64,000 nucleotides of DNA from Phaeosaccion multiseriatum (GCA_965112735.1 OZ218963.1:1488001-1552000), one strand, 5' to 3'; counted from the first letter of the stretch, positions 13,919-44,424 are shown. Numbers and translations are program-made. The notes: generated by a model not told the origin, from the letters alone.

Positions 13919-16900
13919 ACGGGGGCGTCGCAGGCGGGCGTCTCAGTGTGGAGTTGGGTGCCCACGGGTCGTTGCAGGCGCAGCAGGAGGCGTTGTGGTG
14001 GCTGAATCACGAGCAAGTCCTGGTGAGTCGTGCGGCGTGCGTGGTCGGTGCCACGCAGCAGTGGAGCATCGGTATACACAATCAGCATAATGAGACGATC
14101 GTCGTGGTCCCTGGGCAGGCTGTGGGCGTGGGCACGTATCTGCTGGCGGAGGAGGATCGGCGAGCAGCGGTGGAGGTGGCGTTATGTGAGCCGGCGCCTC
14201 TTGGTGCGCAGTGCACGCCGCTAGGGGCCCTTCGTCCGCTCCCGCGTCGATGGGCACGCTGGGGTGCGTCTCGTGCTGTGGTCGGTGGCGAGGAGCGTGG
14301 TGGTGGTGTCGGTGGCGGAAGTGCAGCAGCAGCCGGAGGAGGAGGAGGAGGAGATGGCGGAGGAGGCGGAGGCGAAGGAGGAGGAGGAGGAGGAGGAGAT
14401 GGCGGAGGCGGCGAAGGTGGAGGAGGAGGAGGCAACGACGGAGCGCCCCGACAGGCGTGGCTCGAGGCTGTGGCTTTGCGTGAGCGCTGGGGACGCGAGA
14501 CAGTGGCCTCCGAGCTGGTCGATGGGCCTGAGGATGTTTGTGCAGCAGCAGCCGGAGGAGGAGGAGGAGGAGGAGATGGTGGAGGAGGCGGAGGCGAAGG
14601 AGGAGGAGGAGGAGGAGGAGATGGCGGAGGCGGCGAAGGTGGAGGAGGAGGAGGCAACGACGGAGCGCCCCGACAGGCGTGGCTCGAGGCTGTGGCTTTG
14701 CGTGAGCGATGGGGACGCGAGACAGTGGCCTCCGAGCTGGTCGATGGGCCTGAGGATGTTTTCCGCCCTGTGCCGCTGGGGCCCGTGGCTCTGGGAGCCG
14801 TCCGTGCTCCGGTAGTGCAGGCAGTGCGGCCCGTGACGAGGGAGTCGGGCAAACACAGGCCCTGCAGGCCTGCTCGACTGGGGCTCGGTCGGGGTCTACG
14901 GGTGGCGAGGCGGCACGTCTCACTCTCAGTGGAGGGGCCTTTTACTGCTGGTCCTTGCATCTTGGCTCGACACGCACGGGCTGTAGCGGCCGCAGCCGCA
15001 GCTGACGGCGGCGGCGGAGGCGCAGCAGTCGCAGGAGGCGGCGCAAGGGGAGGAGGAGGAGGAGGCGGCGGAGGAGCCGCAGGAGGAGGAGCACCTTCCC
15101 TGTGCGTGTCTGAGGCCGCTGTGGCAGCGGTGGACGGGGGGCCCTCAATTGGCGACGCTGGGCCTGGAGGAGGAGGAGGCGATGGAGGAGGAGCCCGCGG
15201 AGACGCAGAAGGAGGCGGAGGAGGGGGAGGAGGAGGAGGCGGAGGAGGAGGAGGAGGAGGAGGAGGAGACGCAGGAGGAGGGGCACCTTCCCTGTGCGTG
15301 TCTGAGGTCGGTGTGGCAGCGGTGGACGGGGGGCCCTCAATTGGCGACGCGGTGACTGGGGAGGTGGAGGTGGTGCCGACCACGGAGTCTCCCCAGGCCG
15401 CCCTGCATGCATTGCAGGATGACGTGACGGCTGGGCAGCAGGTTGAGGCTACTCAGGGCTGTCTGCAGGGCCCGACCTGGACTATCGACGAGCATGGTGC
15501 CTTGACGTTGGGCGGCACGGGTGAGGGACGGCAGGCGGGCACACGGGAGGCCGCTCACAGCTTGATCGTGCGTGAGTGGGCGCCTCGTCTCGCAGCGAGT
15601 GGGCAGGAGCGGCTCCGTACGTGTTTGGCGGCTGCGGAGGTGGGTGCAGTTACGGCTCTCCTGCTCCTCCGCCCACACGTGCAGCAGACGCAAGGGGGCC
15701 TGGAGGGTGTCGATGATGTGGTGGTGGCTCAGTGGTTGGAGCAACTCTTGTCCATGTGGAGCAGTCACTCGTTGCTGAAGCAGGCCGGTGTGGAGACGGA
15801 GCTGAACGCAGCACTGCAGTTGTTTCTCACCATTCGGCGGCTCCTGTGGCAGTGTCGTGCCCTGCGGGCGGAGGTGGGAGGGTTGGCAGGTGGTGAATGT
15901 GTGCAGCAGCAGAGGCGGCGGGCGCAAGCAGCAGTGGCACGGGCCAAATTCTACCGGGCGCAGCTGCCCCAGCACATGCACGCAATGACTATCGGTGATG
16001 AAGGTTGGACAGAAGCGCAGCGGTGGGGCTTGGTGGTGGTGTTGAAGCAGCGAGTAGCGGCCTTCTGCGTGGATGGGAGCGATTACGGCCGCACAGATTC
16101 GGGCCGGTTTGGGTTTCCGTTGCTGGACCCGAAGCAGCCGCCAATTCGGAGTGCGGCACGGCGCTACCCTCCTCCGGTCCGGCGCGGTATTGAGATTGAG
16201 TTGAACAAGATGTTAGCAGCAGAGATCATCCGGCCCAGCACAGCAGCCTGGGCCACTCCACTCATGGCCGTGTTGAAGACGGACGAGCACGGCAACACCA
16301 AGTGCCACGAGGACGGCACTCCGATCGTGCGGATGACGTGTGACCTGTCGCAGCTCAATGACGCGTGCCGCACGGAGGCGCCCGCCATGCCAGTGGTGGA
16401 TGATTTGCTGGCGGAAATGCAGGGGTCTACGGTCTTTTCGGTGATGGACATAATGTCTGGCTACTTCAATGTGCCCATGGCCACCACGGAGGATGAGGAC
16501 ATCTCTACATTTGTTTGCCACAGTGGCACGTACGCCTGGAGAGTCATGCCACAAGGAGCGAAGAATGCACCCGCCACGTTCGTACGCCTTATGAACACGG
16601 TGTTGCAGGGCCTACAGGCATTCGTGGCGTGCTTCGTGGACGACATTGCAGTTTTCTCCGCCACGGTGGATCAGCACATTGGCCAGTTAGACCAAGTTCT
16701 CGGCAGGATGGTGCAGCACAAGCTCAAGCTGGCGCCGAGCAAGGTGGTGTTGGGGGCATCTCAGGTGCGCTTCTGTGGGCATTTGGTGGATAGTGAGGGG
16801 GTGCGGGCCGATCCAGCCAAGTATGCAGCAGTTCGAGCGCTGGCCAAGCCCACTGCGCAATCAGGCAATCAGGTGCGACAGGTCAGGCGATTTGTAGGCA

Positions 16901-18810
16901 TGCTCAGCTACTTCCGCAAATTCATTCCGGCGTTTGCCATGAAGGTGCGGCCGCTCAATGAGCTCTTGCGCAAAGGGGTGGATGTGCGGTCAGCGTGGGG
17001 GCCGAGGCACGACGCGGCGTGGGAGGGGCTCATCGAGGACCTGCTCCGCTCGCCCGCGTTGGCCTTCCCTCACTATGGCTCGGAATCGGTGTTCACGCTC
17101 AGCACCGACGCTTCAGCAGACGGGTTAGGGGGTGTGCTGACGCAGCGGGATGCCGAGGGGGTGGAGCGAGTCGTGACGTTCATCAGTCGTGCCACTACCC
17201 CCACGGAGGCTCGGCTAGGCAGTACGGAGCTCGAGCTCTTGGCGGTGGTTTGGTGTGTGCGCAAGTTGAGCATGTACATTTGCCACCATCCCTGCACGGT
17301 GGTGACGGACCACCAACCCTTGCTGTGGCTGGCGACGCACAAGGACACCAACTCCAAGCCCTTTCGGTGGTATGAACGGCTCTCTGCTCATCATCTCAAG
17401 TTTGTCCACAAACCGGGGCGGGAGCTTGTGGTGCCTGACTGCTTGTCACGCGACCCCTTGCCAGTGACCGAGTGGTGTGATGCGGTGGGAGTGGAGGTGG
17501 CGTTGGTGGATGTGGTGGGTGACACCCTCGCGTTAGGGTGGGAGGATCCGGTGGAAGGTGCGGTGCTGCGGTTTGTTGCCGCGGCGCAGCAGTTGCAAGG
17601 GGAGGCGGTGGCGGCTCAGTCAGTGCCTATGGAGGGACTCTCGTCGGTCACGGCGAGACAGCAAGCGTCGGCAGGTTTGGAGGCGCTGTGCGTGGACAGT
17701 GTGGCGATCGCGGCACCAGGCGGCTTCGGGTCGGCTCGGCTGCAGCACGTGGAGCAGATGCGGCAATGTGGCTGGGCTCCAGTGACCCTGTCCCACATCA
17801 ACGAGAAGAAACGGGTGATAGAGGAGTGGTCTCAGCTGCCGCTGTTTCTCAGCCACGTGCCAGCAGCGCGGTGCACGTACATACGCACGGAGGAGCAGGT
17901 GTGGGACATGCGAGCGGCACTGCGGGAGGCGACAGTGGTGGCCATGGACTCGGAGTGGGCTATACGCACTCCTCCTCGGCCGGCGTCTCTGCTGCAATTG
18001 GGTGTTCAGTATAGCGGCGTCGCCAATTCGGAGCGTGATTGTGGGTTCTGGGTGGATTTGGACAGTTTGAGTGGCAATGGTGGTATGGAGGCGCTGGCGG
18101 CGGTGCTGAGTGAGCTGTGGGGCGACGGGGGGATTATGAAGCTGGCGCATCACTGGAGTCACGACCAGCGTGCCCTAGGGAAGTGGCCGGCGTTGGCGCC
18201 GCATGTGTGGACCATCGCCAACTTGGTCGACACGACGCATTTATTCAAGGAGGTGTGGCCTGAGCACTGCCGTCCCATTGGCTTAGCAGACCTGGTTAGT
18301 ATGTTCCTGCAGCGTTTTATGAGCAAGGAGGAGCAGAAGACGGATTGGACTCAGCGGGAGCTCACTGCGGCCCAGCTCAGCTATGCCTTCGACGATGTGG
18401 CCGCATTACTACAGTTGCTGCCGAAGATGCGGGCTTGTGCAGTTCCGGTGCCGTCTGCGATGGAAGTGAGCGCGGTGGATAGCGGGGTGGCGGGTGTGAC
18501 GCGTGCTGAGATGCGCGCAGGACAGTTCGTCTCTGCCGGGGTGGGGTATTGGGCCGATCGGGAGCACGCCAGTCCACTCTTCATTTTCTCAGCGACCGCT
18601 AAGTCAGTGGAGATGATCGACCTGATCCTTCTTTCTTACCGACATCCCCAGTGGACCTGGACGGAGCTCATGGACGCAGTGGAGCAGTTCAGGGCGCGCT
18701 ATCGGCCGGCCGCGGCGCGGAGGCGTGGCAAGCTGTCACTACCTCGAGCGGTTATGATTGAGAAGACGTGGAGTGCCATCGCCGCAGATACGGGCGGCTA
18801 CTACACCATG

Positions 18811-21800
18811 TGTGGAAAGTCAGTCGTATGTCAGTGGCCCAGGCCTAGGCAACGCAGTGAGAAACGGTGCCCGTTTCTCACTATCCTCCTGTAGGTGGTC
18901 GTTTAGGACAGTGCATAGATAAGCTAATAGATACAAGGCCGGCTGTCAGGCTAGCTTTGGGGTGCTGCTACCTTATCTGTGTGTCTAGTCCGTTTCGTGG
19001 AGGTCTAAGCACGACTTTCCACAACCCCAAAGCTGAGAAAGAGAGACGGCAGCAGGCGCAACAAGCTGCCTTGGCTGAGGAAGCTCAGCGCAAGCTGCAA
19101 GAGGTACACACGCAGGCTCAAGCGGAGAGCACGCGGGTACAGCAAGTGCGGGACTGGCAAGAGCGGGAGGACGCACTGCGGGCTGTGGCTCAGCCTGTAG
19201 TGCGGGTGAATGGCGTTCTCAGTGGTCTTGGTTCCACTACCGAAGTTGGTGCGCGGCCAAAGAGGAGGGGGCGGCGGTCGAAGAAGCGCAAGGTAAGGCC
19301 CGACGGGGTCAGGGATCCGGCAGAGCGGCAGCTTGAGGAGGAGCGCCAGTGGCAGCAGGAGATGGACGCGATGAAGTGTGATCCGGCAAGGCAGCGCCGG
19401 TGGCAGCAGGAGATTGCAGCGGATCGTCCGGCCTGGTTGGACCGGCCTCCTCTCTCTCTGAAGGATCGGATGCAGCAAGTGGAAGCGGCGCAGGCGCGGC
19501 TGCAGAAGCTGATGGACGAGAAGGCGGCCCAGCTGCTGGCGACGGAGCAGGCCGCGCATGGAGTGCCTCGTACGGTTGCAACGCTGGGACAGCAGGTGAC
19601 GGTGGGGACGAGCCAGCGCTAGCGCAGCCGTGCGCAGCCACGGAGGGTGAGTTTGAGGCCTTGGGCTTTCTCACCCTGCCGTGGCAGGTGTGTGGCAGGG
19701 TGACCTGTGGAGTAACACGTCACACACTGGTGGGTGAGTTTTGCATATTTCTCATCCGGTTTTTTTGGAAGCAGCATAAAGGGGTTTGCTACAGTGTAGC
19801 TTCAGTAGGTGAAAACGCTTGAGTTGCGTGGGGACACGCAACAGTCTTGTCAGGGGAGTGTTAGAAGTGCAGGGATGGCTGACGGGGATGTGGAAAGTCA
19901 GTCGTATGTCAGTGGCCCAGGCCTAGGCAACGCAGTGAGAAACGGTGCCCGTTTCTCACTATCCTCCTGTAGGTGGTCGTTTAGGACAGTGCATAGATAA
20001 GCTAATAGATACAAGGCCTGCTGTCAGGCTAGCTTTGGGGTGCTGCTACCTTATCTGTGTGTCTAGTCCGTTTCGTGGAGGTCTAAGCACGACTTTCCAC
20101 AACCCCAAAGATCCTCCTGTAGGTGGTCGTTTAGGACAGTGCATAGAAAAGCTAATAGATACAAGGCCGGCTGTCAGGCTAGCTTTGGGGTGCTGCTACC
20201 TTATCTGTGTGTCTAGTCCGTTTCGTGGAGGTCTAAGCACGACTTTCCACAACCCCAAAGCTCGAAGACAGTTTGGCACTTGACCAATAGGCTCAGCAGA
20301 GGGAGACTTTGAGTTCATCGTGCGCTAGACTAGCACGTGGACGTTTTTGGTTAGTGTCCAAGGCACGGACACGCCACAGCTTGCTCCGTCAGGGGCGTTT
20401 AGCTTAATTAGCTTTGCTTGGCTTGGCTTTGCTTGGGAACCGGTGGGAGAATTTATTTGTGGGAGAATTTATTGCTTGGCTTTGAAAGAGTGGCACAGCA
20501 GCGCTACCGTGGATCGGCAGCAAGAGGTAGCTAGGGATATTGCAAGGAGCAGCTGCAGGGGCAGCAGCAGGAGGCACGGAAGGATTGGCGCGCAGCTGCA
20601 GGGGCAGCAGCAAAGGATTGGATACAGCAGCTGCAGGGGCAGCAGCAGGAGGCACGGGTATCCGCTATACTTAATCAGAGGGGACCGCTGATTTAGAGGT
20701 TAGCGGCAGGAGATACAGCAGGCTTGGCTGGAGAGGCAGGGGGCGCAGCAGCAGGTGTTGGATACCGCAGCAGCTGCAGAGGCAGCAGCAGCAGCAGCAG
20801 GCACGGATATCAGGCATAATTAGGCACGCTCGGAGGGAGCAGCTGCAGGGGCGCAGCAAGAGGGAAGATGCCGGCATGGCGCGGCGATCGGCTGGCACAG
20901 AGTAAGCGTACTGGCTGGTCCCAGGAGGAACCGATGGGGGATCACGACATGGTCAATCGGTTGATGGAGGAGCTGCATGGAATCAGGATGGACCTTGCAG
21001 CACTTCCGGTGCTACTGGGCCAGCTATTGGGTCGGGATCCAAGGCAGCAGTCGGAGGTGCAGGTAGCTGCTGCACAGGTGGGGTCGGGCAGCAAGCAGAA
21101 ACGATCTAAGGTCGACTGTGGGGCAGGGCAAGTCTTTTCGTGCTTTCACTGCAAGAAGGAGCACTGTCTCTCTCGCTGCCCTACCGAACCGACCACCGGA
21201 GCCATGGTGAGGAAGATGGTGGATGCAGGGAAGCGGTACGGCTTGGGTACAGCTTCCCAGGTGGTGGTGACGCTTGTGCAGCGCACTGAGCAATACAAGC
21301 GCGTCCTTGCTCAGCTGGTGAAGGCCGTGACGACGACAGGGCAGGCAGCACAGCGCAGAGCCTCGAAGGAGTTGCAGACGCTAGAGCTGACGGTGGCGGC
21401 CGCGGCGCAGTCTCGGCTTCGGGTGGCGCAAGCGCAGGCTCAGGAGGAGCAGGTAGAGCAGGCTGGCGTCACGCTTGCAGAGGGGTCAGTGTCTGCTGCG
21501 GTCCTCGAGCGGGAGCGGCAGGAGCGCGAGTCTGTTTGGCTGGAGGAGGAACAGTTGGAGCGGGCGCGTGTGTGTGCGGCTCAGGAGCGGGTGGAGAGGC
21601 GCCGCGTCGGGGAGAAAGAGAGACGGCAGCAGGCGCAACAAGCTGCCTTGGCTGAGGAAGCTCAGCGCAAGCTGCAAGAGGTACACACGCAGGCTCAAGC
21701 GGAGAGCACGCGGGCACAGCAAGTGCGGGACTGGCAAGAGCCTGTGGCATGGTGTTCTCAGTGGTCTTGGTTCCACTACCGAAGTTGGTGCGCGGCCAAA

Positions 21801-31968: not shown

Positions 31969-32202
31969 TGTCGAAACTACCGACAGCTAGCCTCAAAGCC
32001 AAGCTAGAGCAGAGCAGAAGCTGAAGCAAGCACCCGGAAGCCAGCCCACACGCAGGCTGCGCTTCCTTTCTTTTATTACTGATTTACCGTCTAGTTGGCC
32101 CGTTTTCCGGCCGTTACACTACTGATTGGGTCCCCAAGGGACCCCAACTAGGCCACTTCTAACATCCCCCTCACTACACCCCCGCCTCTTCCGCCAGCTC
32201 CC

Positions 32203-35200
32203 TCAGAAGCCGAGATGCGAGCGATAGAATTGCGTCTCGTGCGCCAGCCCGCTGCCCCACTTCTCATGTTGCCGCAGACGGATCGTGCTTTCCCGTTTAG
32301 ACCTATGCCCTCTTTTGACATTCACTCCTGGATCAAGGGCAGTGTGCGGGAGGGCGTTCTCGAACGCCTCTATGGCCTTGGCGTGTCCCCGCTCCAGTAA
32401 CCACTCAGCCCATTCCCAGGTCTGGAAAGTGCCGCCGTCCGACACCGCCCACCGCACGTTATACTCTCGCCGCAGTGGCAGCCCCGTGGCTTTGCGCCAG
32501 CGGAACTTCACAATCCTCGCCAGCGTGGGCACTTTCCCTTCACTCACCTCGTCCAGCTCTAAGCTACGCTGCTCCTGCATTGCGCTGGTAGCCCACTGAG
32601 GAGAGCACCAACGGATATGATACCTGGCGAATCCTTCCGGGAGACCGAAGGGTCGCTCGCTCACCCCATCGATGAACGGCTTCGTCAAGTCTCTGTGGTA
32701 CGCCCGTTGCAGCTGCTCCACACCATTGCCGCGCACCCGTTTCATAGACAGATACACTGCGCTGCGCTGCATGACCTGGTAGTGCTCTTCACTCACCCGC
32801 CCATGCTGAGCACAGTAGGCCCCCAGAGCTGGCCAAGGCAAGACTGTATAAGGACCATCCCACGAGTGCTGCAGAGCCTTGAGTTGCGCTGACGGGGGCC
32901 CTTCGAGTTCTTCCCCTTCTTGCTGGGCGGCGGCACCAGGACGATACAACATCACCTTGGTTCCGGGTCGCAGGGGCGTCGGCCAACGGCGTGAGGCGTT
33001 CTTCAGCTGCAATCTCCCGTGGTAGTCGCAGCGCCTCCCATTGACCACCGCCGCAGCCGCAGCCAGACGTGCCCGCAGTTCGTGGACCCATGCCGAGGCA
33101 GACGAAAACGACCCGTCCTCCACTAGCGCCGGAAGCATCGCCTGTAGAGGCACCGGGGGGTGCCGACCGAACAAGGCGTAGAATGGCGCCATCCCCGTGC
33201 TCTCCTGCGAGCGGCAGTTGTACGCATAGGTGAGCCCGGCGACGTAATCTGGCCACTGCTGCATCTGTGACTCCACGGTCGTCGCCAACATGTCCTTGAT
33301 CGTGGCCATGAAGCGCTCCACCTGCCCATTGGCCTGTTGGTGCATCGGCGTCGTGAACACTTGCGACGCCGATAGAACTCGCATCACATCGCCCATGAGC
33401 GCACTGGTGAACTGCGAGCCTTGATCACTCACCAGCACTCGGGGCACACCCAGGGTGGTGACGACATGCCGCACGAAGGCCCGAGCAATACCTTCCGCCG
33501 TATAGTCCTGTGCCCTCAAAGGCACCACCACTGTCCACTTCGTGAACCAATCCTGAAACACCAAGAGGTACTCCTCACCGCCCATGCCCATAGGAAAGGG
33601 GCCAGCCACATCAGCGCCCATGACCGCCCAAGGTCCATCCACCTTGGAAATGGACGACAGCGGCACAGGCTTTGGCTGCCGGCGAGGAGTCTTGCGTGTC
33701 TGGCACGCCAGACAGGAGCGGGCCCAATACAGCGCATGTGCATTCATCTTCTCCCACCATACGCGCTCTTGCAGCGCGTCTAGCATACGTCCCGGGCCTT
33801 GGTGCCCACCTGCGATGGCATCGGTGTGGGCGGCATGCAGCAAGGCTGGCCGCATCTCCTTGGGCACACATACTTGTAGCCGAGTGTGCCGCACCCGCCA
33901 CCGAAAGCCCCCAGGAGCCCACTTACGCATCAAGAGCCCGTCCTCATCCACAAAGAACTCACCCCCACCTGCATCCACCACGCCGCCGGTGGGCCCAGCC
34001 TGAACACGGCGACGGAGTGCTTCCAGCTCCGCATCAGCCCGCTGCGCACGCACCCACCACGCGGCCTCGACATGCAGACTGCCACCCAAAGCTCCAGCCG
34101 CTCGTCTGTGCGCCGCGGCAGCAGGCACCGTGCCTGGTAGAGACCACCCAAACTGTCGCTCTGCCTCTCGTCGATGCCCATCAAGCTCGCGCTGCAAGGT
34201 GGACTCCTGCTCCACCGGCTCCTTGGAAACTGAATCCACTGCCTCCTCAGCTTCATTATCCACTGCATCCGCAGCTTCATCACCTGCATCCCCCGCTTCT
34301 TCCGTGACCAGTAGATCTGCCGTACCAGGCTCCGACGGCGACTCCGCAGCAGGCGGCTCCCCAGGGTGGGTGATGCGGCCCTCCTCCGTAACAAGCTCCT
34401 CCGAGGGCAGACGAGACGCATCCTCCTCAAGCTCGGCCTCCCATGCAGCCCACGCATGAGCGGCCGCGGCACCCGTTTGCTGAGCCTCCGCTGGTGTGCA
34501 CATCGAGAAGTAGTCACGCGACACCTGACGGACTTGCTTCCATGGCAACTCGATCATGGTATCTAGATGACTGGCCAACGCGCCCACCACCTTCCGCTGG
34601 CGCTTATATGTCCGCGTGAACCGCTCCACCATCTGCATCATTGTCTCCCACGAGCACTGCAGTTTGAATTGCAGTTTGGCCAGGTCGAATACCTCCAACG
34701 TCTTGGAGTGGACACCAAAGATGTAGAGCGGTGACACGTGGTCGCGATCGCCCCAATAACCAACCGCGGCCTGCATGAACCTGCCGACTTGCATCTCCTC
34801 CTGCTCCGCAGGGGTGTGAGCAGGGCTCATCGCGCTAAGCTCCACCCCCGGGCCACCATGGACGAACGGCACACACTCCGCCATGCGAGGCCAGAGGCGG
34901 AGGAGCGCCGCAGCGTCAGCAAACGCGTACTCCCGTTGAGCGGCGGACAGCGGCCGCTTCGTCCAATCGGTGGCCCGCTCCTCCTTGCTAAGGTGTTGCT
35001 CCAAGAACATGCTGACAAGGTCCTGGAGTCCGATGAACTGAGTATGTTCGGGGCACACGCGCTTAAAGAGGTCACTGGTGTCCACCAAGTTGACGATGTG
35101 CTGGACATGCTCCGCGAGCTCCGGCCATCGGCCCAGGGCACGTTGGTCGTGACTCCAGTGGTGAGCCAGCTTCACAATCGAGGGTTCGGTCCACAGGTCC

Positions 35201-38200
35201 CGCAACACTTGCGCCAGTACCATCATACCCCCCGCCTTCTGAAGCGCGTCTAGATCAATCAAGAGCCCATAGTCACGCGCCACATCCGGCAGCGGCCCAA
35301 CCTGCACGGCCAATTGCAGCAGCGACGCGCGCCGTCGGTGACGCGCCCACTCCGAATCCATAGCGACCACTTTGGCTGAGCGCAACTGAGTCGATAGAGC
35401 CTGCACGTGCCTCGGCGTAGACACGTACGTGCACCTCGCTGCGGAAATGTGACTCACAAATGGCGGCATCTGACCCAGCTGCCAGGCCTCTATCACAGCC
35501 TTCTTCACACCCAGCTGGGGTGCTCGCGTAGGCTGCCATCCACATTGCTGAAGACGCTGTGTCCAAGCACGCCGAGCAGTACCCCTGCGTGACTGCGTCG
35601 CCGCCAAGTCCACCTCTGCAGTCTGCCAGGCTTGTAGGGCCTCCGCTCCGCTCTGCTGCTGGTGGTGGCACCGTTGCTGCTGTTGCTGGGCCGTCACGGC
35701 AGGCACAGGAATAGGAAGGCGTGTGTCGGCTTCGCCCTGCAGCTGTTGCGCCACTGCGAGAAAGCGAAGCAGTGCGCCCTCCGTGGGCTCCTCCCAATGA
35801 AGGCTGCACTCGTCCCCTACCATCTCCACCAGGTTCAACTGCACCCCCATCGAAGCACACCAGGTGTGCAAGGGCGACGGCCACTCGCACGCAACCATGG
35901 CCAAGTCTACCCCCGCATGCGTCTCCCACTCCTGCACCGGAAGCGCGTTGCGAGAGAGGCAGTCAGGCACCACCATTTGCTTCCCGGGACGATGCACAAA
36001 CTGCAAGTGGTGCGTAGAGAGCCGCTCGTACCATCTGAACAGCTTGGAATTGGTATCCTTGTGCCCAGCCAACCACAACAAGGGCTGATGGTCCGTCACC
36101 ACTGTGGTGGGGTAGTGGCAGATGTACATGGCCAGTTTGCGCACACACCACACCACTGCCAGCAGCTCCAGCTCCGTGCTGCTCAGTCGCGCCTCCGTCT
36201 CCGTGGTAGCCCGACTGATGAACGTCACCACACGCTCCTCCCCGGTCGCATCTTTCTGAGAGAGCACTCCTGCTAACCCTTCCGTCGAGGCATCGGTACT
36301 CAGGGTGAAAGTCGTCGCTGGCCCGTACTCCGGAAAAGCCAGTGCAGGGGAAGACAACAAGTCGGCAACGAGTCCATCCCAAGCTGCATCGTGCGAGGCA
36401 TTCCAGGCGGTGCTCACGTCGACGCCCTTACGCAGCAGCCCATTGAGGGGCCGCACTTTGCGCGCAAACTCCGGAATGAAACGGCGAAAGTAGCTGAGCA
36501 TGCCAATGAAACGCCGCACCTGCTTAACTCGATTGACGCCGCCATCCTTCGCAAGCAACCTCAACGGCTTGACCAGCTCTTGCACCGCCGCATGCTTGGC
36601 CGGGTCTGTGCGCACCCCATTCTGATCCAGCAAATGCCCGCAGAACCGCACCTCCGGTGCACCCAATACAGCCTTACTCGGCTCCAACTTGAGCTTGTGC
36701 TCCACCAACCGCGCAAGCACAGCATCCAAATGCTCCAGATGCTGCTCAACCGTAGCCGAAAACACAGCAATATCGTCCACAAAGCATGCCACATGCTCCT
36801 GAAGCCCCTTGAGCACCTTGTTCATAAGCCGCACAAAGACTGCAGGCGCATTCTTCGCGCCCTGCGGCATCACTCGCCAAGCGTAAGTTCCACTGTGGCA
36901 CACAAAGGTGGATATGTCCTCTTCCGCTGCTGATGCCATCGGCACATTGAAGTAGCCCGACATGATGTCCATCACCGAGAACACCTTGGAGCCATGCATC
37001 TCTGCCAGCAGATCATCAATCACCGGCATCGCAGGGGCCTCCGTGCGACACGCATCATTCAGCTGAGACAAGTCACACGTCATACGTACCACAGGCGTCC
37101 CATCCTCATGACACTTGGTTTTGCCAGCTGCGTCCGTCTTCAAGACCGCCATCAGCGGAGTAGCCCAGCTGGAAGTGCTGGGGCGAATGATGGCAGCCGC
37201 GAGAAGCTTGTCAATCTCAATCTCAATCCCCCGCCGCAAATGTGGAGGATACCGTCGAGCGGAGCTCCGAATGGGCTGCTGATTCGCATCCTTCAGTCCC
37301 CACTCAAAGAAGAGAGTATCCGTCCGACCGTAGTCACCAGGCCTCTGACAGAATGCTTGCGACCGAGCGCGAAGGATCGCCACCAGTCCCCAGCGTTGCA
37401 CCTCCGTCCAGGCACCGTCGCCAATCGTGATAGCGTGCAGGGGCGACGGTAGCTCCCTGAGCCAGAACTGAGCCCTCTCCGTAGTGAGCTTGGCACGGCG
37501 CCGCTGCTCCACCACAAGCTCTCCTGCATCCCACGACTCCACTCCCCCACCAAGACAGCGACTCTCCTGCAGCACCGTTCGCAATTGGATGAGGAGCAGC
37601 AGCGCATTGGTCATATCCTGCTCCACCTTCTCCTGCTGCTGTAATGGGCGACTAGACCACAACGACAAGAGCTGTTGGGCCCATGCGGCCACAGCAACGT
37701 CCCCAACGCCGCTCAGACCCGTGCCAGCGGCTTGGTGTACATGGGGGCGCAGGAGCAGTAGCGCGGTCACAGCCCCTTCCTCTGCCGCAACCAAGCACTC
37801 GCGCAGACGTCCATACACTCGCTCTGACAGGTGAGGGTACCACTCCTTGATCAACTGCACTCCTGCCATCAGAGTCCCACCGGACGTGTCACTCTGGCTA
37901 CCGAGTCGCAAGGCACCATCCGCATCCAGTACCCACCCATCACCGCGTAGGTCAGTCAATGATGTGCCCACCGCCGCCGACGATGAACCTGCCTCGGACC
38001 GTAGTGGCGGTTCCTCCGACGCCACTGACGATGCCGCCCCTGGCGCAGGCCTGCTGGTGGAATCATCAGCCCCCGCCACGTGGTGGACCTGCAGCTGGCC
38101 TGTACGAGGCGGTCGGGGCTCCTGCAACTGTGTCTGACGGCGTCGCGCTACCGCCGCCGGAGCCACCTGCTGCTGTACCGCATTGGACCGCTGAACCTGC

Positions 38201-41200
38201 TGAGCTGCCGACGAATCCGCTCGCTTAAAGAGCTCTTCCCGCTGGGCCTTGTGCCGTCGCTGCAATGCCCACTGGCGTTGCTGCCGTGCCTGCTGCTGTG
38301 CCGCTTGTAACCGCTTGGCCTGCTGCGTTGCCAACCAGGCTGCTGTCTCCTCCTTCGAGTCCACTCGTGGTGTGTCAGCTCGTCTGGCCGGCACTCGCAC
38401 TGTCCCCCCCCAGGAGGGCGCCAAGGGCACGCGACGCTCCCGCGGCACCTGTCGTTGCCCCAAGTCGCTCCCCCAAGCGAGACGAAGCCCTCGGTGATGC
38501 CAGGCGCAGGAGCCGTCAGCGCACAGCTCCCGTCGCAGCGGCAAAACTTGTCGTCGCACTTGCTCATGGCGCTCCAACACTGCTTGCCGATGAACCTGGT
38601 CCCACAGCACAGGAGACTCCACAAGCATTGATGCCACTCTCCGACGTTGCCGCTGCAACCGCCCAGCACCCACTCGACTCTGACGACACTGACTCCCCTT
38701 CTTGCCGCTGCGCTGCAAATGCTGAAACCGGGCCTTCACTGCCGGCTGAGGCACCAGAGTCGATGGCACCCCCACCTCAGTCCGTGGGTGCGTCAGGGCC
38801 TGCACCTGCACAGCTTGCAGCGGAAGCGCCGTAGCCCCCAGCTCAGCCTCCTCTGGTACCACCGAGCAGCGAACTACAGGCCCCTGCGGTGGGCACCAGA
38901 CCGGCTCAGCTCCTGCTTCAGCTTCAGCCGGCTGCTGCGACGCCTCCTCCTCCACCACAGACTCAACCGCCTCCCGCGCCTTGGACCATGGCAGCCTGCG
39001 CTTCACCACACGCCTCACCATCCCGCCAAGAGCACCAAGCCAGGAGGAGGGGGCCGCTGCAGTCTCCGGCATGGTATCTGAAGAAGCCGGCTCAGCGAGC
39101 ATGAGCGCGGCCACCTCAGCGCTCGCCTCCGAGTCGAGCAAGCAAGAAGCGGTGCCGATGACCTGCCCAGGAACGACCACAATGACCTGATTGTGGTGAT
39201 TCTGCACTGTGATTCGGTAACTCTGCCCCCCAGCATACACACCATCTTTGTGCGCCACTAGAACCTGCTCGTGCTCCAGCCACCATAGAACGTCCGCCTC
39301 TGCCGCCAAGTGTCCGTGAGCGCCCAGCTCCACCACCGCCTGGACACCCTCAACGATACCCGTAAGCTCGAGGAGAAGGGACCCCGTCTGTCCAGGTCCC
39401 AAGCTCAAAGCCTCCACAGCACGTACCCCCCCAACAGCAGCGTTGCCGTCCACCACTGCCAGCACTTGCACAGCCAAGGCATCGGACGGACGAGCATCCG
39501 ACGTGGCCTCCTCCGAAGGAGTCGGAAGCACGTAGAGCTGCTTCGCACGATGATCGACGACTGCCCCTACTTGGGTGAAGAAATCCTGCCCCAAGAAGAT
39601 GGGCCGCGCCAAGTGGTCCACCACATGAAAGGGTAGCACCGGCTGGCACGTCGGCGTGAGTCCCACCTGAAGCCAAACAAGCCCTCTGGACATAGTCTTG
39701 GCACGATTGTCAGCGTAAGACACCTGCACCCCCTTCTGCGTGGCGAGCTCTGACCGCTCCACCGTGCCATCCGCCACCAGTTGATTGAAGCAGGCTGTCG
39801 AGATGCAGCCCGCTCCTGTGCACCCACTGTCCATCAAGGCTGTAAAGGCGCTCTTCTCCACGGCGTCGGCGGCACTGGCATCCCGTGGAGCGGTAGCAGC
39901 CAAGCAATGCCGAGCGTCACTGACCTTCACTGGCGAGCGCACCGTAACCTCGATCGTGTGGCCCCGCCCTGCTGGGACTGCCGTACGACCCGTGGCAGCC
40001 ACCGCTTCGGCAATCTCAGCTCTCCGCACTGCTGTCTGCAAGGCGGCCACCCCCCCGGAGCGTCCTCCATCCGCACACGGTAGAGAGCCAAGGCAGCGCG
40101 TTGCACACACCCCTCACACATATCACACTCACTGTCAACAGCCGACGCACAGGCACAAGCTCCCGGACTGGGGGGCTCCTTGAGCAGAGCGACTCCCGCG
40201 CCAGGCTCCAAGGCTACTGCATGACAAGCACGTACAAACGGATCAAGGGCAAGCGTGTGCAGCCCCGCCTCCTCCGTCAACACCGCCGTGAAAGCAGCCT
40301 CCTGCTGATGCTGCTGTGCTGCTGCTGTCGCACGAGCACGCTGCCTCCGCTGCTTCCTCCGCACCCGCCGTCGAAGAGCTACTGCGCGCCTCGCTGCATC
40401 CTGCTGCTCCTGTGCCGCCTGCTCGTCACCCTTGCGCAGCGCTGCCTTCGCCTGCTGGGCACGCCGTCTCAACCACTTTGCTGCCACCCTCTGCTCAGTC
40501 CTGCTCCGCCCCTCCGCCGGAGGCACCGCTGGAGACGTCAGCGGCAGGGTCCGAAGGCTCTGCTCCTGCTGCTGAAGCTGAACCTCCTCCTGCTGCTGAA
40601 GCTGAACCTGCCACGCCCACTGTTCATGTTCCCCCGTGGGAGTGAATGGCGGAAGAGATGCTGCCCCGAGCGGTAAGGCCCGCACGAGGCCCATGGCCTT
40701 GGCCTGGCGAGGCGTCACCAGGGAGCACAGCTGCTGAGGCTGAAGCTCATCGCTTGACGGTGGGCTGGCTTTTGCAACCTGGACGGCAGCCTCGACAGCA
40801 TGACCCTGCTGCTGCTCCAATTGCTCCTGCTGCCCCCCCGCCACCTGCGGCTGCTGCTGCAGCAGCTGCTGCTGCTGTCCCAGCCGCTGTTGCCGCTCCT
40901 TCGCCGCACGCAGTGCGCGCTGTTCCGGGAAGGCACACGCACGCACCCGCTCCAAACCCCTTGCATCCATCCAGACAGACTCGTGTTGCGCAACGGTTGC
41001 CGCCTCGCACTCAACCTCCCCCACTGCCGACGGTGGCACCTGCTGCTCCGGACACTCACCCGCAACGACTGCATCCTCCTGGCGCAGAGGCAGCGGCAGC
41101 GCGACGTCAGGTCCGCTCGACGGCTCGACGGCAGAGCCGGGCTGCGGTGCTTCGACTAAGCACACGGAGCGTACCACTGGACACGGCTGCTGCTGCTGCT

Positions 41201-41572
41201 GCTGCTGCTGCTCCGGCGGCGGCAGCTGCTCGACTGCGGAAGCCGCTGGCGCAGCCTCCTGGTGCGCGCCCTCCACGACTACCTCTACTGCACGCTGCGC
41301 CTGCTGCTGTACCGCCGTCATCGCCGTGTGCTCACCAGCAACGACTGCATCCGGGCCGTCAGTGCCCCGCGACTGCTCGACCACAGAGCGTACCACAGGA
41401 CCCGGCTGCTGCGCTAGCTGCCGCTCCGGCTGCTGGCGCTGCGGCTGCGGCAGCTGCCGCTCCGACGCTGGCAGCTGCTCGACCGCGGACGGCGCAGGCA
41501 CAGCCTCTCTGTGCGCACCCTCCACGACTGCCTCTACGACACGGCGCTGCTGCTGCTGCTGCTGCTGCTGCA

Positions 41573-41604
<32 letters not shown>

Positions 41605-41894
41605 TGTTGCCGTTGTAGCCGAGCACGTTTGAGTCTGTCGCCACACCACATGTCACTCCGATAAACTCTGATGGCAGGTGACTCCTGCTCTACACGACTA
41701 GCCTGACCGCTCCTACGCTGAGCGTCGGCATGGGGCAAAGGTGGGTCTGACAAACAAGATAGGTGCGAAGTACATTCATTATCTTCTACACTGCTCTTGC
41801 CCGCCCTCCCCCCCTGTTCCCCCACGCCGACGCTATCCTCACGCGCTGCGGTCGTGGGCCCCAGGGCTGCTGGCCAAGCAGCCCCGGGGCACCG
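32203..41894 (-). CDS. pol: Pol of B: Q-rich spacer, Cys motif, protease, dUTPase-like, helical domain, RT, RNase H, DEDDy exonuclease, unknown domain, integrase, chromodomain
   Basis: ORFs 39927-41825 and 32203-40110 join if the G7 run at ~40050-40056 is G8; homolog D is continuous there. Motifs: ALMDSG; FVDD; STDAS; MDSEW/HHWSHD/YAFAD; HTDAIAGGH..CLAC; GADVAG, VSDQGSQF, NGQVER; WDGPY; EYNVRW..TWEW. Confidence 0.93.
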
Positions 41895-42195
41895 TCAGCC
41901 TTCGAACTTGAACCCGTCCTGCGCCGCCAGAGTGCCCGCCACCATTGCTGCTACGGCTTCAGACATGTCGGACTCCTGGTGCTGCGCTCTGACCGCCTGC
42001 CGCCGCTGCACGCGACTCACAATGCCGAGCAGCTCCTCACGCGTAGCGGGGATGGCGTTGCATTCTATCCATCCATGGCCGGCGCGGCGACAAGTCATGC
42101 AGTTAAATGGGGCATTGCCGTTGCCACGCTGCTTCACCGAGCCGTGGAACAGCAAGGGCCGCTGCTGGGTGGGCGTGAGCCGCGGCTGCTGCGCC

Positions 42196-42230
<35 letters not shown>

Positions 42231-44103
42231 TGCATTCACCCCCACCTCCTGTGACGGCTGATGGTCCAGATGCTGCTCCACCGAATTCACGGCCACTTCC
42301 AGATGCTGCTCCACCGCATTCACGGCCACTCCCCCGCGCGGAGTGCGCAGACCACCACCACCACCACCACGGGCCCGCGTAGCCCCACCAGTAGAAGAGA
42401 GCGTAAGTGGGCTACCAGCCTGGAGCACCCGAGTCGCGGAAGGAAATGCCTTCTGGAAGGCGGCGTAGAAATCACTCCACGAGGGAGTCGCCGACTCCCA
42501 GCGCAGCCAGAAGTTGGTCATGCCGTCAGTTAATGGCAACGAGCCGTGACGAAGCCGAATCTCGACCTCTGGCCGCAGCACCGCCAGCAGGCCCGTAACC
42601 AAGGCTTGCTCATCCGTGGCCTGCCCCGTCACCTGCGCCAGACACAGAGAGAGTTCCGCCAGCTTGGTGAGCAGCCTGGCGAGCGCCTGGTTCACCTCGG
42701 CAGGAACGGTGGACGCTTCCAGAGGCTTGGCCTCCCGCACCAACGTCTGGACAAGCTGCTGGAGGCCGTCTCGCGCAACAGGAACGCCGAAGAGACGCAA
42801 CAGACACCTCGCGAGCAATTGGAACTGTGCACTCTCCGTCTCCCACTCCAATGTGACGTGCTGGTCGCCCTCCATCCACGACGCACCCTTCTGAGCCTCC
42901 GCCAGGACAGTGGCCCGATCCACTGCACCCAAGTCGGCCAGCACTCGCTGCTCCATCACCCGCCCTTGGCCCGGAAGCACGGACCCAGTAGAAGTCAAGA
43001 TCTCCTGTCCTTGCAGAATGCTCACCCAGTTGTACATGCGTGCGAGCACCACAGCACGAGGATGAGGCTGTCCAGCCGCATCGAATAGAGAGGGAAGTTT
43101 CTGCTCCTGGAGCACACGGATAGCACCCACGGGCAGCGTGATCGTCTGCACCGTATGACGGGCGGGCGCCTGCAGCACATCCAGGGCCTGCTGCCGTGCC
43201 CGCTCCCGCTCCCGTTCCATGTCCCGCTGTAGCATATCCTTAACCTGCTGCTGCAGCACCTCTACCCCCCCGGTGCGGCATCCTTAACCTGCTGGAGCTG
43301 CGCCGCTAACAGCTCCCGCTGCAACGTCTCCACCTCCAACTGGGCAGCACCCTCAGGCGGCCGCTTCGGCGGCGGCTGCGCCGCCATCTGTCGCTGCAGC
43401 TCCGCCGCCACCTGCTGCTGCAGCTCCACCGCAAACTCCCGCTGCTGCTCCGCCCCCGCGAGAGCCGCAGCACCTCCAGTTCCCGCTGGAGGGCCGCCGT
43501 CTCCGCCTTGCTCTCCCGCAGTTGGGCCGCCATGAGCTGCGCAGCTTGGTGCTGCGTCAGCATCTCAAGCCCCTCCTGGAGAACCCGCGTGTCCTCCTGC
43601 TCCGGTGTCTTCTCTCCCTCCGCTGGCTGATCCACCACCCGAGCCCCGCCAGACGCACCAACAAGAGGGACCAAGGGCGTGCCAACCACATCCCACACCG
43701 TGCTCTCCTCCTGGCCCACCGACTCTGCATCCCCCGAGTGGAAGGAAACCTCCGACGCCGCCACCGTCAGCGGCCTCACCCCAGCAGCAGGAGGGGAAGC
43801 GGCAGCAGCCGTAATCGCAGACCCCTCAAAAAAAGAGGGCGACTCCAGGGACTCCTCCCCCCGACGCAACGCCGCCCGCACACGGTCCACAGCCCCAGGG
43901 CTGGCAGTGACCTCCGCAGGAGGAGCAGCAGCTTCCGATACCACAGACCCCACGTCCGCAGCACCACCATCAGCTCCACCGCCCTCAGCGTCACTCGTAG
44001 CGCCCTCCGCCGATGAAAGACTCAGGAAGTCCCCCTCCTCAGCCCTGGCCACCCTAGCAGCGTGGAACCGCAGGAAGTCCATCCCCGCCTCAGCCAGTGC
44101 CAC
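41895..44103 (-). CDS. gag: Gag of B (two apparent 1-nt frameshifts in G runs near 43455 and 43268)
   Basis: CCHC CMTCRRAGHGWIEC; triplicated V.VN[AS]VEQ spacer; the stop is in frame with pol. Confidence 0.82.
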
Positions 44104-44424
44104 CCTAGCAAGCCCAAAGCTGTCTACGGCCTAAAGCTGGGCAGCTGGAAGCAAAGCTCAAGCCAACACAATAAATCAGCCTCAAAGCTGGATCTCAGAC
44201 CTGTGTCTTTCGGGTCTTCCGGGTTGTCGAAACTACCGACAGCTAGCCTCAAAGCCAAGCTAGAGCAGAGCAGAAGCTGAAGCAAGCACCCGGAAGCCAG
44301 CCCACACGCAGGCTGCGCTTCCTTTCTTTTATTACTGATTTACCGTCTAGTTGGCCCGTTTTCCGGCCGTTACACTACTGATTGGGTCCCCAAGGGACCC
44401 CAACTAGGCCACATCTAACACGCC

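What the first reader, a model, noticed from the sequence alone, without database searches (positions are those of the whole stretch)
34880..35460. Gypsy Pol carrying an intact DEDDy 3'-5' exonuclease between RNase H and integrase (element B; also D 17850-18430)
Seen: both divergent copies have an in-frame ~190-aa domain with ExoI VVAMDSEW..ASLLQL, ExoII KLAHHWSHDQRAL and ExoIII DW..R.L..AQ..YAF[AD]D. All catalytic residues are kept while the surrounding linkers have diverged. Established: this is the RNase D/WRN/Mut-7(EXD) DEDDy signature, and canonical LTR-retrotransposon RTs lack a 3'-5' exonuclease; the extra Pol domains I know of are a second RNase H, dUTPase or chromodomain. Inference: a captured, selected enzyme. 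It could proofread an unusually large 12.5-kb genome, trim the self-primer 3' end, or counter small-RNA silencing. Flanking VxAV-like stretches (EVSAVD/ELSAMS) could be protease sites that release it. B has near-identical LTRs, so the architecture was recently mobile. I know of no description of it but cannot search.
Basis: partly seen in the sequence, partly recalled or inferred. Interest (0 to 1): 0.93.

Follow-up and report, generated by a model that had tools for sequence, protein, structure and literature searches.

The report
Gypsy retrotransposon with built-in exonuclease
A family of jumping genes in a brown-alga-related microalga carries, inside its replication protein, an extra and apparently working 3'-to-5' nuclease that selection has kept; this arrangement was not found in any paper or protein database searched here.

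Summary
Element B (window 31969-44420, minus strand) has one 2635-aa pol frame in the order protease, RT, RNase H, DEDDy exonuclease, integrase. The exonuclease is Pfam PF01612 (E 1e-20), at window 34879-35427. Element D has the same domain at 17875-18432.

All five catalytic residues (D, E, D, Y, D) are present. The predicted fold (pLDDT 92.5) matches Nibbler/Mut-7, RRP6, RNase D and WRN exonucleases.

The genome, an ochrophyte alga, holds about 30 scorable copies in two families that are 58% identical. A full family-D copy elsewhere has the same order in one frame. At unsaturated divergence within families, dN/dS of the domain is 0.08-0.24. Of 29 copies, 27 keep every catalytic residue.

No exonuclease-free close sister family exists in this genome. 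No related polyprotein turned up among billions of public proteins; the only close relative is one 186-aa environmental homologue.

DEDDy exonucleases were described in 2017 as separate ORF3s of bdelloid rotifer LTR elements. I found no description of an in-frame Pol position.

The function is untested. I favour 3'-end trimming of replication intermediates.

The scan had already noted this architecture 19 times on other pieces of this genome.

The parts
31969..44420 (-). Element B, a complete Ty3/Gypsy-type LTR retrotransposon of 12,452 bp
   Evidence: Two 196-bp direct repeats 12,256 bp apart with TG..CA ends, flanked by GGCG on both sides.
44225..44420 (-). 5' LTR of B
   Evidence: 196 bp, 1 mismatch to the 3' LTR.
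31969..32164 (-). 3' LTR of B, preceded by the purine run GAGGGGGA
41895..43259 (-). ORF1 (454 aa), in the gag position, no family match
   Evidence: Pfam finds nothing significant.
39927..41825 (-). ORF2 (632 aa), in the same frame as ORF1 after one stop codon. In other copies it is continuous with pol.
   Evidence: Open frames of 3274-3303 aa occur in other copies. There is a 1-nt indel relative to the C1 copy within 39400-40900.
32203..40110 (-). Pol frame of B, 2635 aa without a stop
39577..39834 (-). Protease region (MDSGCTG ... LGQDFF motifs)
   Evidence: Read directly from the sequence. The D-family counterpart gives weak aspartyl-protease Pfam hits.
36634..37074 (-). Reverse transcriptase (RVT_1), B aa 1013-1159
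   Evidence: Pfam E 1.9e-27.
36016..36405 (-). RNase H (RT_RNaseH / RT_RNaseH_2), B aa 1236-1365
   Evidence: Pfam E 2.9e-28.
34879..35427 (-). DEDDy 3'-5' exonuclease domain, B aa 1562-1744. The catalytic residues are the D and E of MDSEW, the D of SHDQ, and the Y and D of YAFAD.
   Evidence: Pfam PF01612 E 1.1e-20. Catalytic columns are invariant in a 26-sequence alignment. AF2 pLDDT 92.5. Foldseek matches Nibbler, RRP6, RNase D and WRN exonucleases at E about 1e-10.
34456..34797 (-). Conserved post-exonuclease module 'X' (B aa about 1772-1885), fold unknown
   Evidence: Conserved between families B and D. Omega is 0.07 within family D. No Pfam or Atlas match. The AF2 model has low confidence.
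33355..33867 (-). Integrase (Integrase_H2C2 aa 2082-2141 and rve aa 2166-2252)
   Evidence: Pfam E 1.4e-14 and 3.7e-06. The rve hit (27.6 bits) is under Pfam's gathering cut-off of 32.6.
13948..18894 (+). Element D pol fragment, 1648 aa (RT, RNase H, exonuclease, module X). This copy is truncated and has no integrase.
17875..18432 (+). DEDDy exonuclease domain of D (aa 1310-1495)
   Evidence: Pfam PF01612 E 6.2e-15; motifs located.

Best explanation
SHOWN. An old lineage of Ty3/Gypsy LTR retrotransposons in an ochrophyte (stramenopile) alga carries a DnaQ-like DEDDy 3'-5' exonuclease as an integral part of Pol. It is translated in one frame between RNase H and integrase. The domain was acquired once, before families B and D diverged (their synonymous sites are saturated). 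It has since been kept by purifying selection with all five catalytic residues, and the lineage has been mobile recently. I put about 0.9 on this part.

INFERRED. The domain is an active nuclease that is packaged with RT-RNase H and integrase in the virus-like particle. There it trims 3' ends of replication intermediates: non-templated or mismatched 3' nucleotides on strong-stop and full-length cDNA, or leftover RNA primer and template ends. This would let strand transfers and integrase end-processing succeed more often for a long (12.5 kb) element. I put about 0.4 on this mechanism. The overall confidence figure reflects the mechanism, not the existence of the domain.
For: The domain order lies in one uninterrupted frame in B and in a full family-D copy. 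The PF01612 hits are well above the cut-off. D41, E43, D111, Y184 and D188 are invariant in an alignment with 23 cellular homologues. The AF2 model has pLDDT 92.5, and its closest solved folds are Nibbler/Mut-7, RRP6, RNase D and WRN exonuclease domains. By shape, the nearest Atlas clusters include a MUT7 exonuclease cluster (TM 0.82) and a green-algal 3'-5' exonuclease cluster (TM 0.83). The genome gives 45 matches, about 30 of them scorable copies in two families; 27 of 29 keep all catalytic residues. Omega of the exonuclease core is 0.08 (family D, dS 0.19, p 7e-10), 0.15 and 0.24 (family B, p 1e-6 and 4.5e-4), and about 0.22 between families. The only close RT-RNase H relatives in the genome are these two families; the next Gypsy lineage is 33-34% identical. 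The LTRs are near-identical and there is a target-site duplication. Nine copies have an identical exonuclease protein sequence, spread over six contigs. The region is contiguous in contigs of three samples from at least two studies. A position in cis between RT-RNase H and integrase fits a role on the particle's own nucleic acids; this last point is inference.
Against: There is no biochemical, transcript or protein evidence. No RNA run was on record. The closest cellular relatives by sequence (34-36% identity) carry Mut7-C domains. From general knowledge, not tested here, that family and the WRN-like exonucleases work mostly on RNA 3' ends in silencing pathways. This points as much to an RNA or small-RNA substrate as to cDNA. 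Many longer LTR elements manage without an exonuclease, so element size alone does not demand one. Constraint on the domain is weaker than on RT and RNase H (omega 0.04-0.06).
Confidence: 0.45

Rival explanations
1. Counter-silencing enzyme. The element carries a Mut-7/Nibbler/WRN-exo-like nuclease that degrades or trims host small RNAs (or their precursors) aimed at the element. This would be comparable to siRNA-degrading exonucleases and viral nuclease suppressors of RNA silencing.
For: The best-scoring cellular homologues carry Mut7-C. The best solved-structure match is the Nibbler EXO domain, and a MUT7 exonuclease cluster is among the nearest Atlas clusters by shape. From general knowledge, these enzymes act in small-RNA pathways. 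Rodriguez et al. 2017 also raise a silencing-related role.
Against: The domain has no Mut7-C partner. In the tree the element clade sits on its own long branch, not inside the Mut7-C group. A Pol-embedded enzyme is made in small amounts and is likely enclosed in particles, which is a poor place to attack cytoplasmic small RNAs. No small-RNA data were available.
Confidence: 0.2
2. True proofreading. The exonuclease removes nucleotides misincorporated by the element's RT during cDNA synthesis and so lowers the error rate, as nidovirus ExoN does for an RNA polymerase.
For: PF01612 is the fold of the proofreading domain of family-A DNA polymerases, which also appear among the structural matches. 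The domain is in the same polyprotein as the polymerase. The element is long, and many copies are identical or nearly so over 3.6 kb.
Against: No test of fidelity was possible. Near-identical copies equally fit very recent bursts. The domain lies beyond RNase H and is separated from it by a poorly conserved linker of about 195 aa. No reverse-transcribing element is known to proofread (general knowledge).
Confidence: 0.15
3. Non-catalytic module. The fold is kept as an RNA- or DNA-binding or scaffolding domain, as in EXD1 and Maelstrom, and not as a nuclease.
For: Such inactive DEDD derivatives exist (cited in PMC5408684). Selection alone does not prove catalysis.
Against: All five catalytic residues are invariant between two families whose domain is only 58% identical, and in 27 of 29 copies. 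Inactive derivatives typically lose them.
Confidence: 0.1
4. Passenger or artefact. The domain is a host gene fragment picked up by one copy, or an assembly chimera, with no role in the element.
For: None beyond the general fact that LTR elements sometimes transduce host sequence.
Against: The domain is present in both families and in about 30 copies on many contigs. It is under purifying selection. It is contiguous in contigs from independent samples. Host paralogues are similar only at motif level.
Confidence: 0.02

Closest known systems
DEDDy-type exonuclease ORF3 of bdelloid rotifer LTR retrotransposons (Juno, Vesta) and of Athena/Terminon Penelope-like elements (Rodriguez, Kenefick & Arkhipova 2017, PMC5408684; Arkhipova & Yushenova 2019, PMC6431247)
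   Same: An RNase D/WRN/Mut-7-like DnaQ-fold exonuclease carried by LTR retrotransposons. Its function is unknown, and 3'-end processing of RNA or ssDNA has been suggested.
   Different: In rotifers it is a separate ORF3 downstream of pol. The motif is altered to DEED, the authors detected no departure from neutrality, and the hosts are animals. Here it is in frame inside Pol between RNase H and integrase, DEDDy is intact, omega is 0.08-0.24, and the host is a stramenopile alga.
Mut-7 / EXD3 / Nibbler exonucleases (PF01612 + PF01927 Mut7-C)
   Same: These are the best cellular sequence matches (34-36% identity), the best solved-structure match (Nibbler EXO 7jw2) and, as a MUT7 exonuclease cluster, one of the nearest Atlas clusters by shape (TM 0.82). 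They share the same DEDDy residues.
   Different: The element domain has no Mut7-C domain. It forms its own long-branched clade with one environmental homologue. It is part of a retrotransposon polyprotein.
WRN exonuclease domain and plant WRN-like stand-alone exonucleases
   Same: The size is similar (about 200 aa). The fold matches 2fbv and 2e6l (TM 0.67-0.81). The nearest clusters by language-model features are plant 3'-5' exonuclease proteins.
   Different: Identity is only about 22%. There is no RecQ helicase.
Accessory Pol domains of Ty3/Gypsy elements (chromodomain, PHD finger, DNA methyltransferase, dUTPase, second RNase H)
   Same: An extra module inserted in frame in Pol of an otherwise canonical element. 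PHD, methylase and chromo domains do occur among this element's nearest Gypsy relatives.
   Different: None of the 104 nearest Gypsy polyproteins carries PF01612. Unlike most of those accessory modules, this one is a nuclease acting on nucleic-acid ends rather than a chromatin reader.
Nidovirus nsp14 ExoN and arenavirus NP exonuclease
   Same: An exonuclease of the DEDD superfamily acquired by an element that replicates through an error-prone polymerase.
   Different: Those are DEDDh enzymes of RNA viruses with demonstrated roles (proofreading; immune evasion). This is DEDDy, in a reverse-transcribing element, and its function is untested.

Membership tests
DnaQ-like DEDDy 3'-5' exonuclease (Pfam PF01612 DNA_pol_A_exo1) | Profile match above the curated cut-off | tested here: met
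   74.6 bits in B and 55.9 bits in D against a cut-off of 23.6; 55.7 bits in a full family-D copy.
DnaQ-like DEDDy 3'-5' exonuclease (Pfam PF01612 DNA_pol_A_exo1) | ExoI D-x-E, ExoII D, ExoIII Y-x3-D catalytic residues | tested here: met
   D41, E43, D111, Y184 and D188 are invariant in alignment A2 and present in 27 of 29 genomic copies.
DnaQ-like DEDDy 3'-5' exonuclease (Pfam PF01612 DNA_pol_A_exo1) | RNase H-like alpha/beta exonuclease fold | tested here: met
   AF2 pLDDT 92.5, pTM 0.88. Foldseek probability 1.00 to Nibbler, RRP6, RNase D and WRN exonucleases. This rests on a predicted model only.
DnaQ-like DEDDy 3'-5' exonuclease (Pfam PF01612 DNA_pol_A_exo1) | Metal-dependent 3'-5' exonuclease activity | not testable with these tools
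   Needs a biochemical assay.
Mut-7 / EXD3 / Nibbler subfamily | C-terminal Mut7-C (PF01927) domain next to the exonuclease | tested here: not met
   No PF01927 hit in either polyprotein. The downstream 322 aa match no family.
Mut-7 / EXD3 / Nibbler subfamily | Phylogenetic placement inside the subfamily | tested here: inconclusive
   The element clade (B, D, P0001) is 100/100 supported but sits on a branch of length 2.96 outside both the Mut7-C group and the other cellular group. The tree is unrooted and has long branches.
RNase D / RRP6 | HRDC domain after the exonuclease | tested here: not met
   No HRDC hit. The fold of the post-exonuclease module is unresolved.
Ty3/Gypsy (Metaviridae) LTR retrotransposon | LTRs with TG..CA ends, target-site duplication, polypurine tract | tested here: met
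   196-bp LTRs with 1 mismatch, GGCG duplication, GAGGGGGA before the 3' LTR.
Ty3/Gypsy (Metaviridae) LTR retrotransposon | Pol order PR-RT-RH-IN, with integrase after RT | tested here: met
   Pfam order RVT_1, RT_RNaseH, (PF01612), Integrase_H2C2, rve. The rve hits (27.6 and 31.2 bits) are under the gathering cut-off of 32.6; Integrase_H2C2 is well above its cut-off. Protease motifs lie upstream.
Chromovirus branch of Ty3/Gypsy | Chromodomain at the integrase C-terminus | tested here: not met
   No Pfam hit in the C-terminal 335 aa at E up to 1. A Y..V.W...TWE-like stretch at 32446-32463 is only a visual resemblance.
Rotifer-type retroelement DEDDy ORF pool (Juno/Vesta/Athena) | Separate ORF3 downstream of pol; DEED variant; sequence kinship among retroelement copies | tested here: not met
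   Here the domain is in frame within pol and DEDD is intact.

The most novel reading that the evidence does not exclude
The exonuclease works with the element's reverse transcriptase as an editing or proofreading activity, removing mismatched or non-templated 3' nucleotides during cDNA synthesis. That would make this the first reverse-transcribing element with built-in error correction, a retroelement counterpart of nidovirus ExoN.
Probability: 0.15. Interest if true: 0.9.

Novelty: new variant of a known kind. Interest (0 to 1): 0.62.

Why it matters
Reverse transcriptases are regarded as polymerases without editing, and the accessory modules known inside Ty3/Gypsy Pol are mostly chromatin readers, dUTPase or a second RNase H. 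Here a nuclease with an intact active site has been kept under selection for a long time, in cis with RT, RNase H and integrase, in a lineage that is still moving. That gives a natural system for asking what a 3'-5' exonuclease can do for a retroelement: clean cDNA ends, edit errors or blunt small-RNA defence. It also gives a second, independent and better-supported case beside the rotifer ORF3s, which suggests that retroelements recruit DEDDy nucleases repeatedly. If activity is confirmed, an RT-RNase H-exonuclease polyprotein would also interest enzyme engineers.

Tried and rejected
- Long proteins (1450-4600 aa) sharing the exonuclease region: none found.
- The 104 nearest Gypsy polyproteins: none carries PF01612.
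- Exhaustive phmmer against 1.84 billion representatives: one close hit only, P0001 (186 aa, 47% identity); the rest are 36% identical or less. Cluster look-ups gave no names or organisms.
- JGI metagenome scan with a B/D/P0001 profile: only weak, unrelated exonuclease hits.
- Host donor gene: about ten non-element PF01612 loci exist in the genome. The three I fetched share only the ExoIII motif region with the element domain, so no recent host donor was found.
- Post-exonuclease module: no hits in Pfam or the Atlas. The fold of exonuclease plus module X from a 5-sequence alignment was too poor to use (pLDDT 49.5).
- Protease-site idea: only one E[LV]SA[MV] motif, on the C-terminal side.
- Expression: no run on record as RNA. 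The runs are contigs of unknown kind, so they show presence only.
- Exact look-up of rbcS failed because of its GTG start; I used a homology search instead.
- Seven successful literature searches for an in-frame exonuclease in LTR-element Pol found only the rotifer ORF3 work. Repbase, Dfam and GyDB could not be searched.
All comparisons were between natural copies.


Full report
**Observation**

Pfam places PF01612 (DNA_pol_A_exo1) at B aa 1562-1744 (74.6 bits, E 1.1e-20) and at D aa 1310-1495 (55.9 bits). The gathering cut-off is 23.6 bits. In both, the domain follows RVT_1 and RT_RNaseH. In B it is followed by Integrase_H2C2 and rve.

**The element**

- B is bounded by 196-bp LTRs (44225-44420 and 31969-32164) that differ at one base.
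- The LTRs start TG and end CA, and both are flanked by GGCG. A purine run lies before the 3' LTR. The element is 12,452 bp long.
- Two upstream ORFs (454 and 632 aa) have no family match.
- Protease motifs sit near the start of the pol frame.
- Other copies have open frames of 3274-3303 aa. The window's copy differs from one of them by a 1-nt indel in 39400-40900. So here a longer frame is split into 632 + 2635 aa upstream of the protease.
- The window's D copy is a fragment. Its protease is in another frame and no integrase follows.
- A full family-D copy elsewhere (L046) has RVT_1, RNase H, PF01612, Integrase_H2C2 and rve in one frame.

**The domain**

I aligned the B and D domains with the one close homologue and 23 cellular homologues. 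The ExoI Asp and Glu, the ExoII Asp, and the ExoIII Tyr and Asp are all invariant.

AlphaFold2 on that alignment gives pLDDT 92.5 and pTM 0.88. Foldseek against the PDB returns the EXO domains of Nibbler (a Mut-7 homologue), RRP6, RNase D, WRN and EXD2, and the proofreading domains of family-A polymerases, at E around 1e-10. Sequence search of the PDB gives the same families weakly. By shape, the nearest Atlas clusters include a MUT7 exonuclease cluster and green-algal 3'-5' exonucleases; none of them carries RT or integrase. By language-model features the nearest are plant stand-alone 3'-5' exonucleases.

**Copies and selection**

The genome is 67.1 Mb in 22 contigs. It gives 45 matches to the domain:
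- about 20 copies at 89-100% identity (family B), nine of them identical in protein sequence and spread over six contigs;
- about 10 copies at 58% identity (family D);
- fragments.

Searching with RT-RNase H finds the same two families (94-100% and 77-82%), and then nothing closer than 33-34%. So this genome has no exonuclease-free close sister, and the capture predates the B/D split.

Between B and D, synonymous sites are saturated (dS about 1.75). Non-synonymous divergence is still much lower in the domain (omega about 0.22) than in the linkers (0.35-0.44). RT and RNase H are tighter still (0.04-0.06).

At unsaturated divergence within families, for the 183-codon core:

| Pair | Family | Omega | dS | p (excess of synonymous changes) |
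|---|---|---|---|---|
| L022 vs L023 | D | 0.08 | 0.19 | 7e-10 |
| L011 vs L018 | B | 0.15 | 0.17 | 1e-6 |
| L003 vs L018 | B | 0.24 | 0.12 | 4.5e-4 |

A few copies clustered on contig 14 show omega above 1 on very few changes, as expected for decaying insertions. Twenty-seven of 29 copies keep all catalytic residues.

Contigs from three samples in at least two studies carry the RNase H-exonuclease region contiguously, so it is not an assembly artefact. The kind of these runs is not on record, so nothing can be said about expression.

**Relatives elsewhere**

- A search restricted to long proteins found none sharing the domain.
- None of the 104 nearest Gypsy polyproteins carries PF01612. Some carry PHD, DNA methylase or chromo domains.
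- An exhaustive search of 1.84 billion representatives found one close relative, a 186-aa protein (47% identity) on a 917-bp metagenome contig. The next hits are 34-36% identical, and several carry Mut7-C.
- On that short contig the homologue looks like a stand-alone exon: a pyrimidine tract and CAG precede the ATG, and a stop follows ExoIII. What follows it is unlike the element's downstream module.
- In a maximum-likelihood tree, B, D and this homologue form a 100/100 clade on a long branch, apart from both cellular groups.
- Host PF01612 loci exist, but the three I fetched resemble the element domain only around ExoIII.
- A metagenome scan added nothing.

**Host**

rbcS is an uninterrupted red-type gene on two small contigs. 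Its best named relatives are Schizocladia, Vaucheria and brown algae at about 80% identity. The host is therefore an ochrophyte alga. This agrees with other notes of the scan.

**Literature**

Rodriguez, Kenefick and Arkhipova (2017, PMC5408684) described RNase D-like DEDDy exonucleases as separate ORF3s in the rotifer LTR families Juno and Vesta and in Athena elements. The motif there is changed to DEED, and they detected no departure from neutrality. They suggested 3'-end processing. Later reviews repeat this.

Seven successful searches found no description of an exonuclease in frame between RNase H and integrase, including in the Chlamydomonas and Ectocarpus transposon surveys. Repbase, Dfam and GyDB could not be searched. 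The finding is therefore a new variant of a known kind, not a new kind.

**Mechanism**

What is shown: a selected Pol domain with an intact active site, in an active lineage.

What is inferred: because it is made in cis with RT-RNase H and integrase, it most likely acts inside the particle on 3' ends of replication intermediates. It could trim non-templated or mismatched cDNA ends before strand transfer and integration, or clear RNA remnants (about 0.4).

Rivals:
- a counter-silencing nuclease, given its kinship to Mut-7/Nibbler/WRN-like enzymes (0.2);
- genuine proofreading (0.15, the most novel reading);
- a non-catalytic binding module (0.1);
- a passenger or artefact (0.02, rejected by copy number and omega).

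There is a single conserved E[LV]SA[MV] motif, just after the domain. It remains a candidate cleavage site.

**Earlier notes of the scan**

Nineteen first-reader notes describe the same architecture on other pieces of this genome. The listings returned to me showed no follow-up for any of them. My genome-wide search confirms that these are copies of the two families.

Noticed in passing
window 34456-34797 (-); D counterpart about 18520-18860 (+): A module of about 110 aa just after the exonuclease is conserved between families B and D (omega 0.07 within family D). It has no Pfam or Atlas match, and the predicted fold is of low confidence. It could be a partner domain of the exonuclease.
   Followed up: partly
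window 39400-40900 (-): The window's B copy has a 1-nt indel relative to a copy on contig 1. This splits a frame of about 3274 aa into ORF2 (632 aa) and pol (2635 aa). The apparent ORF2/pol overlap is therefore probably a mutation of this copy, not a programmed frameshift.
   Followed up: partly
G000 contig 14, about 2.32-2.75 Mb (0.8-1.2 Mb beyond the window): Many fragmented and decaying copies of both families pile up in one region of about 0.4 Mb. This may be a centromere-like or heterochromatic sink.
   Followed up: no
L031 (917-bp JGI metagenome contig, sample 3300045918): The only close homologue of the element's exonuclease (47% identity) looks like a stand-alone exon of an unknown environmental eukaryote. 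It could represent the donor lineage or a domesticated copy.
   Followed up: partly
window 34398-34401: Contigs of three of the four runs laid (X1, X2, X5), and most other genomic copies, carry extra letters here (35 letters between joints that overlap by 4 bases). This is a length variant in the linker after module X; the window's copy is the shorter form.
   Followed up: no
window about 14200-15700 (+): The N-terminal part of the D frame holds long Gly-rich coding repeats (GGGGGGDGGGG-type), duplicated in tandem, between the protease and RT.
   Followed up: no
window 32446-32463 (-): The C-terminus of B Pol has a stretch that resembles a chromodomain core by eye (Y.V.W ... TWE), but no Pfam hit supports it.
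   Followed up: partly
G000 contigs 18 and 21: The same uninterrupted red-type rbcS gene occurs on two small contigs, so the plastid genome seems to be present twice in the assembly.
   Followed up: no
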